The notes under the pieces are model-generated. The model saw nothing but the letters and a program-made list of their open reading frames with translations. It ran no database searches and was not told the DNA's origin. A stretch of DNA of 63,420 bases, filler included, from Octopus bimaculoides (Eukaryota), in NCBI RefSeq assembly GCF_001194135.2. It is 4 parts of 4 records of this genome, joined end to end, with 100 filler letters (N's around TTAATTAATTAA, not from the genome) between each part and the next. Parts side by side here need not be neighbours in the genome. Positions count along the whole stretch, not along the records: positions 57,523 to 63,420 come from NC_069005.1; 3 more parts are not named here. The stretch is one strand, 5' to 3'. The position numbers were made by a program, and so were the translations under genes. Below are positions 9,181 to 63,420 of the stretch, piece by piece. Each line of letters opens with the position of its first letter. Position 1 is the first letter of the stretch.

Positions 9181-10189
9181 TATACACCTCTTTATGAGCT
9201 GACTTATTTTTTATCCTGTTAAACCAAACCTATCTATTTGTCTTGATGCTTAATATTTGTCTGTCTATCTATCTATCTATTTATCTATCTACCTATCTAT
9301 CTATCTATCAAACCACATGCTATAATACATACAGAGTAAAAAATACCATTTGGGTATTACAGAAGATTTTCATATTTGGATAGTGTGTCAAACTGTATCA
9401 GAGTCAATCCCTGCGCAGACTGTTTGATGACAACCAGACTACCAGGTATCAGGTTTAAGTCAGGTGAAATGTCTTAAACAGATATAAAATCTGGGTTGCA
9501 CACTCAGCTTGTCACTAGCTTAAAACCCCATTATGTCATGTTCATATATGTATTTATACAGACAAACACATTGAATACATGTGCAACGACACACACACAC
9601 ACATGGGCAAACGCATTTATGTGTGTATGTGTAATATTATGTGTATATGTGTGGGTATTGTTATTATTGCTGCTATCACCATCATCATCAATACTATTCT
9701 CATTATTATTATTATCATGATTATTATTATTATTATTATTATTATTTTCTTATCAATATTCTTCTCCTTCTTCTTCTTGTGTGAGCATGCAAACGTGTGT
9801 AAAACAAAAATCAAGTACACATCACATATTTAATGTTTTACTTGTTCCGTAAAGTCGGCTGTAGAGCATGATTGCACTGTGAGCACAAAAAAACAACAAC
9901 AAAAAAACAAAAAAAATGAAACAGAAGTTGCTCTGAAAGAACTCCTAGTGATATCTGAAAAAATACAGGACGGCCACAGCTGGAACATATGTGTTACAAA
10001 GATAATATGATATCTGTCTTCTTTGTCAAGGGTTTATGCTCAATGCCTCTCCCCACCTAATTTATTTTATTTACAGTGTTGCAGAACTTAAATTTTAATT
10101 TTATCCCCCATGGTTTCTGAGAAATAATAATAACTGTGACCAACCATTTGTCTTTTCTGGAACTAGAAAACGCTTATGTAATTTCTAAA

Positions 10190-10450
10190 TCAACTATAGT
10201 TTCACGTTTGTTGTTGGACTAATATGAAAACTGTCTGGAGTAAAGTTGCTCAACTGGGTGCATATCTCGGAGATCAAGGAATCTCTCCAGACTGAGCCAC
10301 TTTTTCTCTGTATTGAGAAATCACAGTAGCAGTACTATGGATATGTGTTTAGAATGTCACAGGGAAGAATTGCAAGATGGATTCTTCAAGCTGAGCTAAC
10401 TGACAGGAGGCCAAGAGTAAACCAAGAATGTGATAGTTGGATAATAGTCG
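10190..10450 (+). mobile_element. RTE-clade LINE 3' ORF remnant, copy 1
   Basis: Frameshifted translation EIKESLQTEPLFLCIEKSQ..YYGYVFRMSQGRIARWILQAEL..RRPR, typical of the RTE C-terminal W.GHV.RM...R......RPRGRP motif. Confidence 0.7.
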
Positions 10451-10970: not shown

Positions 10971-13795
10971 TGTTTGATGACTTTATCCCATGACCCTCCC
11001 AGAAATAGTTGGCAAAGATTGATGGAGGAATAACTCTTTACCATTTGGATTACTCTGTCAAATGTAATGCTTATTTATTCACATTGCTTTGAATTAATCG
11101 TGCATTATCTCATAGCTTTGAGATTTCAATGATATGATTATTTTTAGAATGACATAGTAGGTTAAGCGTAAGAAGCCAGGTCTGGCTGGTTTGAACATAA
11201 AACAGGTAGAATATTTGGGCTGGAAATGGTTGGTTTAAATGCTAAAGGATAATATCACAATTCTTGATCCCACGCTCATTGCCTTCAAAAAGATTTTACC
11301 ACATCCATTATCATACATTTGCTTGTATTATAATGTTGTGTATGAATGTACTGTCGCTACCCCAAGGAGCCATTTCACCAGGGTTTACAATAGTGGTACA
11401 ATTGATTTTATGTAATGTTATCTTATACATCTCAGCTCTCTTGCTAATGGTGTCTCAAAACAAATCACTTCCATCACAATCCACTTACATCACATCAAGG
11501 CATACCCTGAAACCTGTTCTGATCCATAGTTTGTGTTGAAACTCCCTTCATAGAAATCAACAACCCTGTCAGTTATGTTGCAATGACTCACTTGATATCA
11601 TACCACAACTAAATCCCTTCTCTGACGTAATTTGCTTGTGCAGATATAAATTCTACAAAACCTCCCATAACCATAAATCTTTTATACTTCTAAGTATAGA
11701 CATCCCTCCCTCTAGACATCTTATTTTAATTCTAGTCCCTTACAAACTGTAATACAGTAACATAATTCTCTCACAGTTCTCCCTCTCTATATTCCTTTAC
11801 CATAGGTCTCCCTCCCACACTATTGACCTGTATATTTGTATAATTGCCCCATTGTTCATACTGCCTTCATCTCTATTTCTTTAGAATCTGTTTATTAAGG
11901 CTTCCGATGTTTACTACCCACCAATAAGCATTCTTTGTTATTGTCTTCACTTTGACAGACCTCCCTGTTGTCCTGGTCCCTTCCTCCTTTTATAAGCTAC
12001 TTGATCTCTCTTATCTCTGGTTATTGTCAAGGGATATCTTCATAGTACCAATTCCCCTTTAGTTGCTCACCCCTCTCCCTCTTCTCCTCTTTCTGTCTAG
12101 TTTTTTCCTTACCCCTCCTCTATATGCTTTTAGCTACATTCTTCTAATGAGGGTGACATGACTTTGCCTAACACATGTGTAAGAACTTGTGTTATTCCAT
12201 ACGCCTGCCTGACACTGTGGGTCTTTATTATATAATGCTTTGGCTATAGTAAAAGCTATAAATCAACCAAAACAGATAAACAAAAAGATGACAAGAAATT
12301 AAAAAAGAAAAAGAAGAATCACCTTTCTATAGGGCTGGTAACTTTATCTATTGAGCCTGAAGGAATGAAAGACCAAGTTGATCCTGGCATGATTCAAACT
12401 GAAACTGCTGGGTGTTGGGGGAAAAAAAAAACTATGGTAGAAAATATTTATTCAAGGTATCATATGGTAGGACACACACACACACACACACATGTATGTA
12501 TCTATGTGAGTTCAATATTCTAAAAAGATCAAAGCTATTATATACAAAATTGTTTCAAGCAATGTTTGGTTCTCTACCTTCTCAATCCATTCATGCCCCA
12601 AGGAAATGACTATATATTTAAATTGTAAAAATATATATCTAATTATTGAATGTATTTTATTAAGAAAATGTCTTTTTAATCTTTCTGTTTTAGCTTTAAT
12701 TTTACTTTAGTTTCTTGTTTACATGACTAAACTTCACAAAACCATTTCTGTTGCTAGGATTGATTGGGTATTTCATATTGTGCTTGGAAATTTAACTTGG
12801 AATCAAAGAACACAGCACTGAATTGATATTACTTTGCTGTTTTGGAATCATTAGTGGGACAATGAGCTGCTTGATAAAAAAGGGGCATCATGAAAAGGGG
12901 TATTGATAAAATAGATGTATTCTTGTAGAAACTGGCAGGATAGAGAAGAAAATTCAATGTAGATTAAAGAGGAATCTTGAAGCTGGAAGCATTCATAAAG
13001 ATGGTGGTGTATGTGGCTAATATTGGTACATGAAGGGGAGAATGTTAAGAGTGGAAGGTTTAAAGAAGTTGGCAGTGTATGTTGGAAATTAATCTAGACA
13101 GAAGAATTGTGAGGCAGGAACATTTAAAGAAGCTGGCAGGGTAGGGAGAAAAGTGGGGACAATTCATATAGACAGAAGAAGAATCTTCAGGCTAAAAGAT
13201 TTTAAGAAGTTAGTAATATATGGAGTACGGAGTGGTTTAATAAATATATAAGCATAGGAATAATAAAAAAAAATAATAATAATAAACTGCATACTGGCTG
13301 GGAAGGTTTAGTGAAAGAAATTGAAATCAATGAGAGATATCTGAGCTGTTAATAGAAAATCTAACCAGTTTAGGTTAGTTCAATTTCAATGTTTGTCGAG
13401 ATAAAACTATATATAATAAAGCAGAACCAATTGATAGGGTGATCAATGTGTTTGAAATGAAGTCTAGATCAACATTTTCAGTCAAGGAAGCTGTGAAGTG
13501 TTATTTATTATTTTCTAGAATCTTTTATTTCTTGATGTGTATCGAGTCAGTGAAGGAGTTATTGATTTACATTTCACATCGATATCATCGGGTCTTAAGA
13601 CAAACCAGACCAATCACTTATGGGTCGGTCCATTTGTAAAAACCTGGCGTAAAAGATTGGAAGCATATTGAAATCAAGCTCCGTAATAGTTTTGCTTATT
13701 AATAACGACATCAAATGTTTTTCAATGGTTGGTTCGAAGAGATGGAGTCACACTTACATATATATGTATATTCTACTATGCATAGGTGCGTACAC

Positions 13796-57522: not shown

Positions 57523-57595
57523 GATAGAAGTTTAGGATGTTGTTACATAACGACTTCACAGTGTGACATAGCATGTGCATAACAGACATGCATAT

Positions 57596-57635
<40 letters not shown>

Positions 57636-57639
<4 letters not shown>

Positions 57640-57799
57640 AGGAGTGGCTGTGTGGTAAGTAGCTTGCTTACCAACCACATGGTTCCGGGTTTGGTACCAC
57701 TGTGTGTGGCACCTTGGGCAAGTGTCTTCTACTATAGCCTCGGGCCGACCAAAGCCTTGTGAGTGGATTTGGTAGACGGAAACTGAAAGAAGCCCGTCG
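57636..57799 (+). mobile_element. SINE family B head (CORE-like CCTTGGGCAAGTGTCTT motif)
   Basis: GCGCAGGAGTGGCTGTGTGGTAAG...CCTTGGGCAAGTGTCTTCTACTATAG...AAGAAGCCCGTCG, followed by (TA)n. Confidence 0.8.
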
Positions 57800-57999
57800 T
57801 ATATATATGTATATATATATATAGCCGGTTTCAGCCAGGTTGGCATCAAAAGGGTTGAAAATATCATGGTGACATTAACCCTTTTGTGACCATATTTCTG
57901 TTGAGATGCTCTGTGTTTCTTTCAATTAATTTTAAGTATAACAAAGAATTTAGTAAACTAACTTAGTTATCATTCAGCTAGTATTAGGAACATAAATTT

Positions 58000-58310
58000 G
58001 AGAGGTCACGGCTCCGATACTACAGATATGGGATTAGATGGTAGCAGGAAATGACTGCAAGACGAATGCTGGATGCTGAGCCAACCAGCAAGGAGACCTA
58101 AGGGTAGACCAAAAATTTGCAATGGTTGGATAATGATCCATAATCTCAGTTTGTCTCACTTGGGAACCCAGCCAGAAAGTGTAAGGATGATTGCTTCTGA
58201 TAGGACCCTATGGACAAGGTGTCTCAGGGACCAACCAACCCCCACCCACCCCCACAACTCACCCAGGCATAGCAGGCAGACAAGAAGGATGGATGGATGG
58301 ATGGAAGGAT
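58000..58310 (+). mobile_element. RTE-clade LINE 3' end with (GATG)n tail, in the SARM1 upstream intron
   Basis: ERSRLRYY...RRMLDAEP..RPKGRPK...IASDRTLWTRCLRD, followed by GGATGGATGGATGGATGG. Confidence 0.7.
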
Positions 58311-58381
58311 CAAATAAGATAACTTTGTCTTTCTTTTTTAAAATAACCACTGCCCCTTTTTTTTTTCGCCTTTCATTCTAG

Positions 58382-58571
58382 TTTACTTAAGGTTCACTTA
58401 CAACTCCGAGGGTTTTCAGTTTTCCTTGATATAGAGCGGCTACGAGCGGGTAAATTCGATGTAGGTTTGCTAAAGAGTGTACAAAAAGCCAGAAATTTCA
58501 TCCTCGTCCTCACACCTCAAGCCTTAGATCGTTGTATTGGTGATAACGAGAGGAAAGACTGGGTCCACAGG
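58382..58571 (+). CDS. SARM1: SARM1 TIR-domain exon (alphaA to alphaC, includes the BB loop)
   Basis: Pyrimidine-rich acceptor TTTCATTCTAG and donor CAGG/GTAAGT. 190 nt, entering after a phase-2 intron and exiting at phase 0. Translates (S)[63 protein letters not shown], which aligns without gaps to human SARM1 [64 protein letters not shown] (recalled sequence). Confidence 0.96.
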
Positions 58572-58660
58572 GTAAGTTGACAATTATCTATTTATACATG
58601 GTTATATTTGTCTGTTTTTCATTTAATTAATTATTATCAATTTATTATTATTATTTTTAC

Positions 58661-58726
<66 letters not shown>

Positions 58727-58755
58727 TCCCTGCCAAATGATAATGATGTTATTAG

Positions 58756-58990
58756 TGAGGGTGCGTGGCCTGGTGGTTACGGTGTTGCATTCGTAATTGT
58801 CAGATTGTGGTTTCAGTTCTCAGACTGGGTGGTGCATTGTGTTCTTGAGCAAAACACTCCATCTCACGTTGCTCTGGAATGCTTTCGACACCTGACATGT
58901 GGCACACTGCACACCTGTTCACATGGAAAATGTGAGCTAATGTACAGCACGTACATTTGATCTCTATAAACAAGCCTTTTGTCCAGGTCA
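58756..58990 (+). mobile_element. Degenerate tRNA-derived SINE in the SARM1 intron 58572-59205
   Basis: TGGCCTGGTGGTTA A-box-like head and TTGTGTTCTTGAGCAAAACACT core-like motif. Confidence 0.55.
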
Positions 58991-59205
58991 TTCAACAAAA
59001 AACTGAAACACTCATACATCATCTTCAACGAGAGTCCATCATTATTATTATTATTATTATGTGTGGCCTTCTTGTGAGAAGCTGTCGATCAAAAGGTAAA
59101 GATCCGAAGGATTATTATTATGATTATTGTTGTTGTTATTGTTGTTGTTCTGTCACTTCAAGGTACTGATAATTTTTTCGTTGTTTTCTTTGTGTCTATT
59201 TGCAG

Positions 59206-59327
59206 GAAATTGCCGCAGCGTTAGAACACAAGTGTAACATAATTCCTTTAATGGACAATTTTGACTGGCCTCCTTGTGAGAAGCTTCCAGAAGACATACG
59301 TTCTGTCACATGTTTTAATGGAGTCAG
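59206..59327 (+). CDS. SARM1: SARM1 TIR-domain exon starting with the catalytic glutamate
   Basis: Acceptor TGTCTATTTGCAG and donor AG/GTAAAT. 122 nt, phase-compatible with both neighbours. Translates [40 protein letters not shown](R), matching human [41 protein letters not shown]. The first codon GAA corresponds to E642. Confidence 0.96.
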
Positions 59328-59432
59328 GTAAATAATTAATATCACCTTGTTATTGGCGGTTGGATGTTTTTGTTTTGTTTGTAAGAGTTGAGCCATGTAA
59401 AACCAAAATCGTATCTGTGGCTTGTGCCTCTT

Positions 59433-59730
59433 GACTGGCTCCCGTGCTGGTGGCATGTAAAAAGCACTGTCCGAATGTGGTCAATGCCAGCTCCCCCTGA
59501 CTGGCTCTCATGCCGGTGGCACGTAAAAAGCACCATCCAAAGATGGCCAATGCCAGTACCCCCTGACTGGCTCTCATGCCGGTGGCACGTAAAACGTACC
59601 ATCTGAATGTGGCTGATGCCCATACCCCGTGACTGGCCCCCATGACAGTGGCACATAAAAAGCACTATCCGAATGCGATTGATGCCAGGCCCTGTGCTGG
59701 TGGCACATGAAAAGCACCCACTACACTCTC
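59433..59730 (+). repeat. 66-bp tandem array (about 4.5 diverged copies) in the SARM1 intron 59328-60358
   Basis: GACTGGC units start at 59433, 59499, 59565 and 59631, each containing GGTGGCACGTAAAAAGCAC-like sequence. The array runs into GGTTGGTGTTAGGAAGGACATC...GTAGAAAC. Confidence 0.9.
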
Positions 59731-60358
59731 AAGAGTGGTTGGTGTTAGGAAGGACATCGAGCTGTAGAAACATTGCCAGATCAGATTGGAGCCTGGTGCA
59801 GCCTCTGGCTCTCCAGACCTCAGTCTTTACATTCTGAGTTCAAATTCCACTGAGGACGACTGCCTTTCATCCTTTCGGGGTCAATAGAATAAGTACCAGC
59901 TGAGCACTGGGGTTGATGTAATCAACTCGCCCCCACCCCCCATACTTGTCGGCCATGTGCCAAAATTTGAAATCATCATCATCACCGAGGCAGTGAATTG
60001 ATAGATCTATTATTGCATCGAACAGGATGCTTAGCAGCATTTCTTCTGACTCTTTACATTCTGTGTTCAAATCCTGCTAAAGTCAACATTGCCTTTCATC
60101 CTTTTGCAGTCAATAAAACAAAGTACCAGTCGAGTGCTAAGCCCCTTCCCCTTACATCCCCATGACTTAGTGGTTCAGCAAAAAGAACTGATAGAATAAC
60201 AGCCAGACTTAAAATTAAGTGTTGGTTTGTTCAGCTAAACGCTTCAAAGCAGTCCTCCAGCATGGCCACAGGATTAAAGGTATGAATACACCATGAGAGC
60301 GTTACTAATATCACTTCAATTAATTAATTTGATTTATTTATTTTTTTTTTAACCCTAG

Positions 60359-60554
60359 GTGGATTCACGATTACCAAGATGCCTGTGTTGACAAAATCGA
60401 ACGGTTTTTACGAGGTGACGTGAATGTGAAAAGGGGACAGCTTCAGTCCTTAAGTAATCAGGGATCGTTTGAAGACCCAGTAATGGCACAGTTCAAGTGG
60501 AGCAGCAGCAGCAGCAGCGAGAATGATTCCCCACCAAAGAATTCCCCAAGTTAA
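60359..60554 (+). CDS. SARM1: SARM1 terminal coding exon (end of TIR plus Ser-rich tail)
   Basis: Acceptor poly-T-AACCCTAG after a phase-2 intron. Translates (R)[64 protein letters not shown], with stop TAA at 60552-60554. [16 protein letters not shown] is the invertebrate Sarm signature. Confidence 0.93.
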
Positions 60555-60585
60555 CTAAGATCTTTTACCTAACCGTTTCTTTGTA

Positions 60586-60595
60586 AATAAATAAA
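60586..60595 (+). promoter_or_regulatory. Possible polyadenylation signal of SARM1 (two overlapping AATAAA)
   Basis: AATAAATAAA about 30 nt after the stop. The context is AT-rich, so chance occurrence is likely. Confidence 0.3.
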
Positions 60596-60799
60596 TATGT
60601 AGGTATATGTATGTGTGTATGAACATATATATATATGTTCATATATTTGTATATATATTTGTATATATATGTGCATATATATATATGTATATATATGTAT
60701 ATATATGTATATATATATCTATATATATATATATGTGTGTACATATATATGTGCTTACATATGAGTATATATATGTTTATATATATAAGTGCATACATA

Positions 60800-60852
<53 letters not shown>

Positions 60853-60906
60853 GTAATGCATATATATATAAATACATATGTATGCATTTATATATATATA
60901 TATGTA

Positions 60907-60962
<56 letters not shown>

Positions 60963-61200
60963 TACATATGTATTTATATATATATGCATTACATATGTAT
61001 GTGTGTGTGTATATATATGTATATGTATACATACATATATATGTATATATACATATATGTACATATATACAATATATACTTATTTCATCTATATATATAT
61101 ATATATATATGCGTACAAGCATATCTATACCTATATGTGTATATACGCACATATACATACATACATATACACACATGCATACACACAAATACATATATGA
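60596..61200. repeat. Long compound (TA)n/(TG)n/(CA)n microsatellite just after the SARM1 stop
   Basis: Direct inspection. Confidence 0.9.
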
Positions 61201-61610
61201 ATTCTATTCACTAATAGCTGCTATTTCACGTAACACTCAACACTCACTCCTTGGTGCCCAGAACAAACAAACAAAAAAGCTGAAACTTTAGAGAAGTTTT
61301 TGAATGAAATTTGGGCCAAAATTGTAATGAGTTTACTTTTAAAAAATTGATTATTTTTTAAAATTATTTCCATTTTAAATAATATTTAATGAAATTAAAC
61401 ACTACAAAATATCTCGGAAATAACTTTCAGGCATTAAAGTAAGAAGCATAATAATAATAATAATGATGATAATAAAAATAATAATAATAGTAGGTTTGTG
61501 AACAGAAAATGCAGTAAGACTAAATGACATTTTGGACAAAATATTTTACAATACCTTTCCCTACCTTCTTAGTTTTTGATGTGTGTGTGTGTGTGTTTAT
61601 GCATATTTTC

Positions 61611-61641
<31 letters not shown>

Positions 61642-61805
61642 TTATAAAATCTGGTAATTATTCATATATTAATTAATATCGATTAATTATCAGGAGGCCA
61701 GCACATCTAAAGAATCAAAGAGATTCAGAAATATTATCTGCAATCTCAGGGGATTAATGTACATTTTAAAAAAATAACGTTGACCACTAACGTGGACAAT
61801 ATATT

Positions 61806-61857
<52 letters not shown>

Positions 61858-61965
61858 CACATATATATACACATATATGTATTAATGTTTGGTTTTGTGT
61901 TCCATTAAAATAAAAACAGATTTACACTAATCTTATGGGTTACTCTATACTTTTGTAGAGTACAA

Positions 61966-62096
61966 ATTTATTATTCTTAGACAAGAATGTTGTCGACAGT
62001 GACTTCGAAGTTTTGGCCAGCTAAGCTACCATTGAACTTAGCTGGTCGAAACCTCAGGGTCACTATCAATGATATTCTTGTTTAAGAAAAATAAAT
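61966..62096 (+). other. Ungapped 60-bp imperfect palindrome/hairpin
   Basis: Arms 61966-62025 and 62037-62096 around loop CTACCATTGAA. Hand count on the plus strand gives 47 Watson-Crick pairs, 8 G-U pairs and 5 mismatches. Confidence 0.85.
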
Positions 62097-62215
62097 ATAT
62101 GTGTGTGCATGTGTTGAATGGGTTGGGTGTCTTTTCAGTTTTCATCTACCAAAACCACTTACAAAGCTTTGGTTATCCTAGGACTACAGTAGAAAACATT
62201 TGGGCAAGGTACCCT

Positions 62216-62256
<41 letters not shown>

Positions 62257-63420
62257 TATATATATGTATTATATATTATATATGTATATATAAATGTAGT
62301 ACCCTTGTGTATGTATATATATATATATATACATACATATATATATAAATTAAGGTTTACTTTGGAGTATAGCCCTTGATTTTGAGCTCAAAGTAATAGC
62401 TATACTCCATAGTAAAACTTAGCATGGAAAATAAACACTGCTAGCATGTCTGTAATGTGTGTGTGTGTGTGTGTACACATATATGTATTTATATGTACAT
62501 AGAAAGTACAAATGTACACTTATACAGTACATATGTATACACATATGTACACTTCTACAGTACATATGTATACACATATGTACTGTATAAGAAGGTTCTT
62601 AGGTGTCTGTCCAAAATGTCTTAGTGCTGCTGCATTTTCTATTTCTTCCTTTACTTCTGCTCAAAATAAAACAACTAAGAATCTCTTCAAATCAAAACTT
62701 GCCGCAAAATTACTATGATGGCTTACATAGTGACTATTGGACTATTTGGTCATGAGTTCAAACCTCGCTACTGAACTCTGTGTCGTCTCCCTGTCACGGC
62801 ACAGACCCCCTGCTTGCTTCAGTCTGTTTCGGAAGACAAGAGGTTACTACTCTCACTTCGGAGGTTAGCGAGAGCTTAGTAGCAGGTAGAGGGCCATTTT
62901 AGAGTGTAAGAATTAACCAAAAATAAATGAAAATAATTCTATTGAATAGGCGTGGCCAAAGAATTATGTGCAAGGCTTGAGGTTTACAAATCATGAAACC
63001 CATGCTAGCACAAGTTAATGAATTTGGAACAAAATTAAATTCGTTGTCTTTAACTGTAGAGCTCTTGTATCTATTATACAAATTTTCTCCATGTTCAAAA
63101 AATTTTTTTTTTTTTTTTCTATTTATTTATTTATTTATTTTTGAATGATCTTTAAATGTAACTGATAATAATGACTTTTGATATAATTCTGTCATTTATT
63201 CTGTGAGTCTGTTTTTCCAAATTCCGGCTTATGACACTAGCCGTTTAGTTAGTCCATGGAAAATTCTAGATAAAAATTTGTTATAAAATGTATAAATGCA
63301 TATGTATGTGTGTGCATACATACACACACACACATGTATATATATATATATATGCATACATACATACATGCATACATGCATGCATATATACATACATATA
63401 CATACATACATACATACATA

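What the first reader, a model, noticed from the sequence alone, without database searches (positions are those of the whole stretch)
58382..60554. Cephalopod-type SARM1 TIR NADase with intact catalytic machinery
Seen: three phase-compatible exons missed by the ORF track. Established: the SARM1 TIR is the NAD+-cleaving executor of programmed axon degeneration and shares its catalytic Glu with plant and bacterial (Thoeris) TIR enzymes. Equivalents of human D594, G601, W638, E642, W662, N679, H685 and Y687 are all present (numbering recalled). Inference: an active NADase in an animal known for nerve regeneration and extensive neural RNA recoding.
Basis: partly seen in the sequence, partly recalled or inferred. 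Interest (0 to 1): 0.7.

Follow-up and report, generated by a model that had tools for sequence, protein, structure and literature searches.

The report
Last three exons of SARM1

Summary
Three exons with canonical AG/GT borders (58382-58571, 59206-59327, 60359-60554) join in frame into a 168-residue peptide that ends at a TAA stop.

- **Identity:** residues 1-124 align without a gap to human SARM1 residues 579-702 (E = 2e-46, 57% identity over 122 residues). The only solved structures matched by sequence are SARM1 and C. elegans TIR-1. Every named database homologue is SARM1, sarm1-like or Ect4.
- **Catalytic residues:** The catalytic Glu is the first codon of exon 2 (GAA, 59206-59208). Other tested functional positions are kept or conservatively changed; C635 is Arg.
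- **Selection:** a related locus from another genome (L001) has the same three exons, phases and stop position. Protein identity is 89%, synonymous sites are saturated and the introns are unalignable (pN/pS about 0.08). This is a functional gene under purifying selection.

Three limits apply. The first fifth of the TIR domain (FISYRR: Y568, R569, R570) and the SAM and ARM domains lie outside the piece. The cephalopod origin could not be verified. NADase activity, splicing and RNA editing remain inference.

Verdict: an ordinary orthologue of a well-characterised gene, of low interest.

The parts
58382..58571 (+). Coding exon E1 (190 nt, entered in phase 1). It encodes LLKVHLQL...KDWVHR, equivalent to human SARM1 579-641. 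This covers the BB-loop residues D594, E596, G601, F603 and L607, and also D627, C629, W638 and H640.
   Evidence: Canonical AG acceptor and GTAAGT donor. Gapless alignment to human SARM1. Residue map. The orthologous exon lies at L001 10099-10288 and is 92% identical at protein level.
58572..59205 (+). Intron 1 (634 nt). It contains an (ATT)n microsatellite and a 28-nt near copy of part of exon 2 at 59056-59083.
   Evidence: GT...AG borders. Tandem repeats. No blastn similarity to the L001 intron. Near-duplicate of the exon segment.
59206..59327 (+). Coding exon E2 (122 nt). It encodes [40 protein letters not shown] plus the first two bases (AG) of an Arg codon, equivalent to human 642-682. 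Its first codon, GAA at 59206-59208, is the catalytic Glu (E642). It also carries the W662 and N679 equivalents.
   Evidence: Splice sites, alignment and residue map. The orthologous exon is at L001 12191-12312 with identical borders. Skipping it would shift the frame and give a stop after 10 codons.
59328..60358 (+). Intron 2 (1031 nt). It is filled with repeats: a 66-bp tandem array at 59432-59675 and two copies of a dispersed repeat at 59824-59899 and 60051-60129.
60359..60554 (+). Terminal coding exon E3 (196 nt, including the TAA stop at 60552-60554). It holds the end of the TIR domain ([19 protein letters not shown], with the H685, Y687 and Q688 equivalents; E686 is Asp). A 46-residue Ser-rich C-terminal tail follows (from G123), which among the sequences compared is alignable only with L001.
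   Evidence: L001 13389-13584 has its stop codon at the same position. The tail does not align with bivalve or arthropod homologues.
60586..60591 (+). First AATAAA after the stop codon, a possible polyadenylation signal. Further candidates lie downstream. The extent of the 3' UTR is unknown.
   Evidence: Pattern scan only. Inference, with no transcript data.

Best explanation
The interval holds the three 3'-terminal coding exons of the SARM1 orthologue (sterile-alpha and TIR motif protein; dSarm/Ect4 in flies, TIR-1 in worms) of a mollusc-type, probably cephalopod, genome. They encode the TIR domain from the end of helix alpha-A to its last helix, followed by a short Ser-rich C-terminal tail that is lineage-specific.

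By homology, the protein is expected to work like SARM1 and TIR-1. SAM domains build an octamer, and an N-terminal ARM domain holds the TIR domains apart. On activation the TIR domains assemble through their BB and EE loops. The composite active site then cleaves NAD+, with the Glu encoded at 59206-59208 as the catalytic residue.

Shown here: the exon structure, the homology, conservation of the functional residues that fall within the piece, and purifying selection. Inferred: expression, enzyme activity, regulation and biological role.
For: - **Homology.** phmmer against PDB matches only SARM1 and TIR-1, at E = 2e-46, with peptide residues 1-124 aligned to human 579-702 without a gap. The peptide matches Pfam TIR_2 above its cutoff. 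All named homologues among 220 hits are SARM1, sarm1-like or Ect4; Saccostrea is 65% identical, and Pecten 79% over exon 1. Identity to human is 57% over 122 residues.
- **Functional residues.** The equivalents of D594, E596, G601, F603, D627, C629, W638, H640, E642, W662, N679, H685, Y687 and Q688 are identical to human. K597R, K628R and E686D are conservative. C635R is shared with L001. L607 is also kept (alignment). The roles of these residues are described in PMC8266388 and bioRxiv 10.1101/2024.11.19.624255. All 34 columns that are invariant in the 34-sequence alignment (window peptide plus 33 homologues) are, by construction, shared by the window.
- **Orthologous locus.** L001 has the same three exons, the same splice phases and the same stop position. 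Protein identity is 89%, with pN = 0.072 against pS of about 0.94. Third-codon-position identity is 41%, and the introns are unalignable.
- **Upstream exons in L001.** L001 also carries the upstream FISYRR exon, which ends ...GCA AG|gt. This matches the single leading T of E1 to give Ser. A SAM exon lies further upstream.
- **Fold search.** The only significant matches are SARM1 and TIR-1.
Against: No transcript evidence is available, so splicing and expression are inferred. The piece lacks the first fifth of the TIR domain and all of the SAM and ARM domains, so full-length integrity of this particular gene copy is not shown. The AlphaFold model of the truncated domain is only moderate: mean pLDDT 61 and TM about 0.45-0.53 to SARM1 TIR structures. 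It therefore adds nothing independent of sequence. The taxon was not verified.
Confidence: 0.93

Rival explanations
1. It is a lineage-specific SARM1-like paralogue rather than the 1:1 orthologue. Its role might have diverged, for example towards immune signalling.
For: Molluscs can carry several SARM genes: three were reported in Aplysia (PMC9334734). The piece shows neither the ARM nor the SAM domains, and the rest of the genome could not be searched.
Against: Similarity to human SARM1 is very high and gapless. The syntenic counterpart L001 has the FISYRR and SAM exons upstream. The sequence is under strong purifying selection and shares its C-terminal tail with L001. There is no sign of accelerated divergence.
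Confidence: 0.05
2. It is a silent or decaying gene copy (pseudogene) whose 3' exons merely still look intact.
For: No expression data are available. The introns and flanks are heavily invaded by repeats. The 5' part of the gene was not seen.
Against: The reading frame is intact and all six splice sites are canonical. pN/pS is about 0.08 with saturated synonymous sites, and the exon borders and stop position are identical in a distant relative. Introns rule out a processed pseudogene.
Confidence: 0.01
3. The TIR domain acts only as a protein-protein signalling scaffold (a classical TLR-adaptor role) and has no NADase activity in this lineage.
For: SARM was first described as a TLR adaptor, and the activity of this protein has not been measured.
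Against: The catalytic Glu and the tested substrate-contacting and assembly residues within the piece are conserved. Both human SARM1 and the distant C. elegans TIR-1 are deposited in PDB as NAD(+) hydrolases, so activity is the ancestral state.
Confidence: 0.01

Closest known systems
Human SARM1 (NAD+ hydrolase SARM1; PDB examples 6o0q, 7knq)
   Same: The TIR domain aligns without gaps over human residues 579-702 at 57% identity. The catalytic E642, the BB-loop residues (D594, E596, G601, F603), W638, H640, W662, N679, H685 and Y687 are all identical.
   Different: K597R, K628R and E686D are conservative changes, and C635 is Arg. After the TIR domain there is a different, Ser-rich 46-residue C-terminal tail. 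Only the last three exons are visible here.
C. elegans TIR-1 (PDB 8p2m) and Drosophila dSarm/Ect4
   Same: They belong to the same orthologous family. TIR-1 matches at E = 2e-44 by sequence and is the top fold-search hit. Ect4 appears among the named homologues.
   Different: These are more distant lineages, and their tails and linker regions are unrelated.
Mollusc 'NAD(+) hydrolase sarm1-like' predictions (Saccostrea cucullata P0002; Pecten maximus P0117)
   Same: Identity is 65% over 90% of the peptide for Saccostrea and 79% over exon 1 for Pecten. The TIR core is the same.
   Different: The C-terminal tail does not align. The window's tail is shared only with the unnamed locus L001.
Bacterial Thoeris ThsB and plant TIR NADases
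   Same: They share the TIR fold and a catalytic Glu. This rests on established knowledge and was not tested here.
   Different: They are not close relatives. No bacterial or plant TIR reached E <= 1e-3 in the PDB sequence search, nor in the fold search. This is an animal SARM1, not a Thoeris-type protein.

Membership tests
SARM1 / TIR-1 / dSarm orthologous family | The TIR domain is more similar to SARM1 TIR than to any other TIR family (reciprocal-hit criterion). | tested here: met
   The PDB sequence search gives 19 distinct sequences at E <= 1e-3, all SARM1 or TIR-1, the best at 2e-46. All named homologues are SARM1, sarm1-like or Ect4. The 30 significant Foldseek hits are all SARM1 or TIR-1. 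Pfam TIR_2 scores 34.4 bits against a cutoff of 28.
SARM1 / TIR-1 / dSarm orthologous family | Catalytic glutamate (human E642) in the W-x-H-x-E context. | tested here: met
   The peptide reads DWVHRE. The Glu codon GAA at 59206-59208 is the first codon of exon 2. W638 and H640 are identical to human.
SARM1 / TIR-1 / dSarm orthologous family | BB-loop and substrate-contact residues (D594, E596, G601, F603, L607, W662). | tested here: met
   All are identical to human in the window and in L001. Their roles are described in PMC8266388 and bioRxiv 10.1101/2024.11.19.624255.
SARM1 / TIR-1 / dSarm orthologous family | EE-loop assembly residues (N679, H685, Y687). | tested here: met
   All three are identical. 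The neighbouring E686 is Asp, a conservative change.
SARM1 / TIR-1 / dSarm orthologous family | N-terminal TIR segment FISYRR (Y568, R569, R570). | not testable with these tools
   This exon is not in the piece. Only 859 bp lie upstream of E1, and no match was found there. In the orthologous locus L001 it lies about 7.3 kb upstream and reads DVFISYRRSNGSQLA.
SARM1 / TIR-1 / dSarm orthologous family | Tandem SAM domains upstream of the TIR domain (octamerisation). | not testable with these tools
   These lie outside the piece. In L001 a SAM-like exon is present at about 403-612, 45% identical to the SAM_2-bearing N-terminus of Pecten P0117.
SARM1 / TIR-1 / dSarm orthologous family | N-terminal ARM domain with the allosteric NMN/NAD+ site. 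| not testable with these tools
   It lies outside both the piece and the 20-kb L001 locus.
SARM1 / TIR-1 / dSarm orthologous family | NAD+ glycohydrolase or cyclase activity that depends on the catalytic Glu. | not testable with these tools
   This needs a biochemical assay. It is inferred only from residue conservation.
Functional (non-pseudogene) locus | Intact frame, canonical splice sites and purifying selection against an orthologue. | tested here: met
   pN is 0.072 and pS about 0.94, a ratio of 0.077 (0.05 within the TIR part). Exon borders and stop position are identical in L001.
A literature look-up of the accessions was uninformative. A protein search with a SINE-derived ORF found nothing. 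The nearest named homologues are bivalves. The SINE at 57640-57800 resembles an abundant octopus SINE, but this rests on my memory only.

The most novel reading that the evidence does not exclude
In this animal the SARM1 message is recoded by A-to-I editing, or alternatively spliced around the exon that starts with the catalytic Glu. Either change would tune or switch off NADase activity, for example during nerve regeneration. Nothing here supports this. Synonymous sites are saturated between the two lineages, and the spliced coding piece folds no better than shuffled controls (z = +1.8 for the window, 0.0 for L001). Without RNA data it cannot be excluded.
Probability: 0.07. Interest if true: 0.45.

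Novelty: already known. Interest (0 to 1): 0.1.

Why it matters
It matters little beyond correct annotation. SARM1 is conserved across animals, and its TIR NADase mechanism is well characterised in human, fly and worm. An intact orthologue in a mollusc or cephalopod genome is the expected result. The held literature contains no study of SARM1 function in cephalopods. The gene could therefore be a reasonable candidate for work on axon degeneration and regeneration in these animals, but the sequence itself shows nothing unusual.

Tried and rejected
1. **Taxon identification.** A protein search with the antisense ORF of the SINE at 57556-57867 found no candidate. A literature search for the sample accessions of the two closest loci found only a neighbouring accession, ERR3431204, which is Mytilus coruscus. 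That says nothing about ERR3431203.
2. **RNA genes.** The Rfam scan of the piece gave only sub-threshold 'mir-297/466/3149' hits inside TA/CA low-complexity runs, which are artefacts. No tRNAs were found.
3. **Other ORFs.** A Pfam scan of eight other ORFs in the piece found nothing significant.
4. **Conserved non-coding sequence.** blastn of the introns and flanks against L001 found no similarity.
5. **Structure model.** The AlphaFold2 model of the 168-residue peptide was only moderate (pLDDT 61), because strand beta-A is missing and the alignment is shallow. The fold search simply repeats the sequence result.
6. **RNA structure as a hint of editing.** The spliced coding piece shows no excess stability (z = +1.8 and 0.0).
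7. **Explanations rejected.** A chance ORF is excluded by E = 2e-46. A processed pseudogene is excluded by the introns. A bacterial or Thoeris-type TIR is excluded because no such hit appeared.
8. **A wasted search.** One literature search was badly framed and returned irrelevant papers.

Full report
**What is in the sequence.** The piece 57523-63420 is AT-rich (34% GC) eukaryotic genomic DNA, full of microsatellites and dispersed repeats. Three short, GC-richer (44%) segments on the + strand have canonical splice borders. E1 is 58382-58571, with tttcattctag| before it and |gtaagt after it. E2 is 59206-59327 (ctatttgcag| ... |gtaaat). E3 is 60359-60554 (aaccctag| ... TAA). The only refinement is that the acceptor AG of the last intron ends at 60358, so E3 starts at 60359.

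The phases fit. The first base of E1 completes a codon from an upstream exon. E1 ends on a codon boundary. E2 ends with AG, which the first G of E3 completes to an Arg codon. The joined 168-residue peptide, [14 protein letters not shown]...PPKNSPS*, has no internal stop.

**What it is.** phmmer against all PDB chains returns 19 distinct sequences at E <= 1e-3. All of them are human SARM1 or C. elegans TIR-1. The best is at E = 2e-46, and peptide residues 1-124 align to human 579-702 without a single gap. Identity to human is 57% over 122 residues. Pfam gives TIR_2 above its cutoff.

A search of 5.8 billion proteins gives 220 hits at E <= 1e-10. Every hit that carries a name is SARM1, 'NAD(+) hydrolase sarm1-like' or Ect4. 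The named ones include Saccostrea cucullata (65%), Pecten maximus (79% over exon 1), spiders, mites and insects. The 34-sequence alignment (the window peptide plus 33 homologues) has 34 invariant columns, so the window shares every residue that never varies among the homologues. The window departs from near-invariant columns only at N28G and M94I, and L001 shares both changes.

**Catalytic and assembly residues.** The 724-residue PDB chain carries native human numbering, so peptide position i corresponds to human residue i + 578. The catalytic Glu is GAA at 59206-59208, the very first codon of exon 2.

Other positions tested in the literature are also identical: E596, F603, D627, C629, H640 and Q688. 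L607 is also kept, as the alignment shows. K597R, K628R and E686D are conservative, and C635 is Arg. The roles of these residues come from two papers:
- PMC8266388 shows that mutating E642, Y568, H685, D594 or G601 reduces NADase activity, and that W638, H640 and E686 affect Km.
- bioRxiv 10.1101/2024.11.19.624255 reports that R569 contacts the diphosphates, F603 and L607 the pyridine, and W662 the adenine. N679, H685 and Y687 lie in the EE loop and take part in two-stranded TIR assembly.

**What cannot be seen.** The TIR domain starts about 18 residues earlier, at DVFISYRR. This segment carries Y568, R569 and R570 and lies in an upstream exon. The piece has only 859 bp upstream of E1, and that stretch contains no such coding segment. 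The SAM and ARM domains are also outside the piece. 'Intact catalytic machinery' is therefore shown for about four fifths of the domain only.

**Independent support from a related genome.** One exon-1-like hit, P0092, led to a 20-kb locus L001 from a 208-kb ENA contig. L001 has the same three exons at 10099-10288, 12191-12312 and 13389-13584. Their lengths are the same (190, 122 and 196 nt), the splice phases match, and the stop codon sits at the same position.

Protein identity is 89%, including the Ser-rich C-terminal tail, which does not align with bivalve or arthropod homologues. Nucleotide divergence is concentrated at third codon positions, where identity is 41%, against 89% and 95% at positions 1 and 2. 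pN is 0.072 and pS about 0.94 (saturated), a ratio of 0.077, or 0.05 within the TIR part. The introns show no blastn similarity. This is the signature of a functional gene under strong purifying selection in two deeply diverged relatives.

L001 also shows the missing upstream parts. An exon reading ...KKIDVFISYRRSNGSQLA ends in AG|gt about 7.3 kb upstream. Together with the leading T of E1 this makes the Ser of 'QLAS|LLKV'. A SAM-like exon lies further upstream. A third locus, L002, from a Logan assembly, is closer to L001 than to the window.

**Exon 2.** Indirectly, the exon and both of its splice sites are conserved in L001. Skipping its 122 nt would shift the frame and stop translation after 10 codons. 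Constitutive inclusion is therefore the sensible expectation.

**Mechanism (inferred from homology).** The protein is expected to work as in human SARM1 and worm TIR-1. SAM domains form an octamer, and the ARM domain holds the enzyme inactive. On activation the TIR domains assemble through their BB and EE loops into two-stranded arrays. The composite active site then cleaves NAD+, with the Glu as the catalytic residue. Nothing in the visible part departs from this. Activity itself was not, and could not be, tested.

**Taxon.** The cephalopod assignment could not be verified. The two closest loci are unnamed. Looking up their accessions in the literature was uninformative. A protein search with a SINE-derived ORF found nothing. 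The nearest named relatives are bivalves, so a molluscan origin is supported. From memory only, the element at 57640-57800 resembles a very abundant octopus SINE.

**RNA recoding and regeneration.** No evidence bears on these ideas directly. Two indirect points argue against anything special in these exons. Synonymous sites are saturated between the two lineages, so there is no sign of the synonymous constraint expected around conserved editing sites. The spliced 508-nt coding piece also folds no better than dinucleotide shuffles (z = +1.8 for the window, 0.0 for L001). The held literature contains no study of SARM1 in cephalopods.

**Structure.** An AlphaFold2 model of the truncated peptide was only moderate: mean pLDDT 61, with the core at residues 40-100 reaching 80-93. 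Foldseek against PDB gave 30 significant hits, all SARM1 or TIR-1, with TM of about 0.45-0.53. This agrees with the sequence result but adds nothing independent.

**Verdict.** The feature is the 3' end of an ordinary, conserved SARM1 orthologue, a gene family whose members are already routinely predicted in mollusc genomes. It is already known in kind and of low interest.

Noticed in passing
window 59056-59083 (intron 1): A 28-nt near copy (24/28 identical; the core 20-mer is 19/20) of exon-2 bases 59258-59285 (coding ...DWPPCEKL). It lies 202 bp upstream on the same strand, between (ATT)n runs. The chance expectation is 0.00 matches. It is not present in the L001 intron. It may be a small local duplication; its meaning is unknown.
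   Followed up: partly
window 57640-57800 (+) and 62133-62213 (reverse): A SINE-like dispersed repeat upstream of E1, with a partial inverted copy (78% identity) 1.6 kb downstream of the stop codon. From memory it resembles an abundant octopus SINE. No tRNA was detected, and a protein-level search with its ORF found nothing.
   Followed up: partly
window 59432-59675 (intron 2): A tandem array of a 66-bp unit, 3.7 copies at 82% match. It creates spurious ORFs of 70-107 aa on both strands.
   Followed up: no
window 59824-59899 and 60051-60129 (intron 2): Two direct copies (80% identity) of another short dispersed repeat, 227 bp apart.
   Followed up: no
window 61966-62096 and 62351-62421: Two palindromic, MITE-like hairpin elements: one of 131 nt that is 76% self-complementary, and one of 71 nt that is 83% self-complementary. 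The first gives a weak sub-threshold Rfam hit to a MITE-derived plant miRNA family.
   Followed up: no
window 58073-58240 (+): An ORF reading ...RRPKGRPKICNGW...DRTLWTRC..., which looks like the C-terminal tail of a non-LTR retrotransposon ORF2 just upstream of E1. This rests on memory only; there was no Pfam hit.
   Followed up: partly
window 60600-61200, 61800-61880, 62220-62350, 63290-63420: Long TA/CA-rich low-complexity blocks begin about 50 bp after the stop codon. They produce many sub-threshold 'mir-297/466/3149' Rfam matches and long Ile/Tyr-rich ORFs. All of these are artefacts.
   Followed up: yes
This could be a local tandem duplication at that species' SARM1 exon or an assembly artefact.
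   Followed up: no
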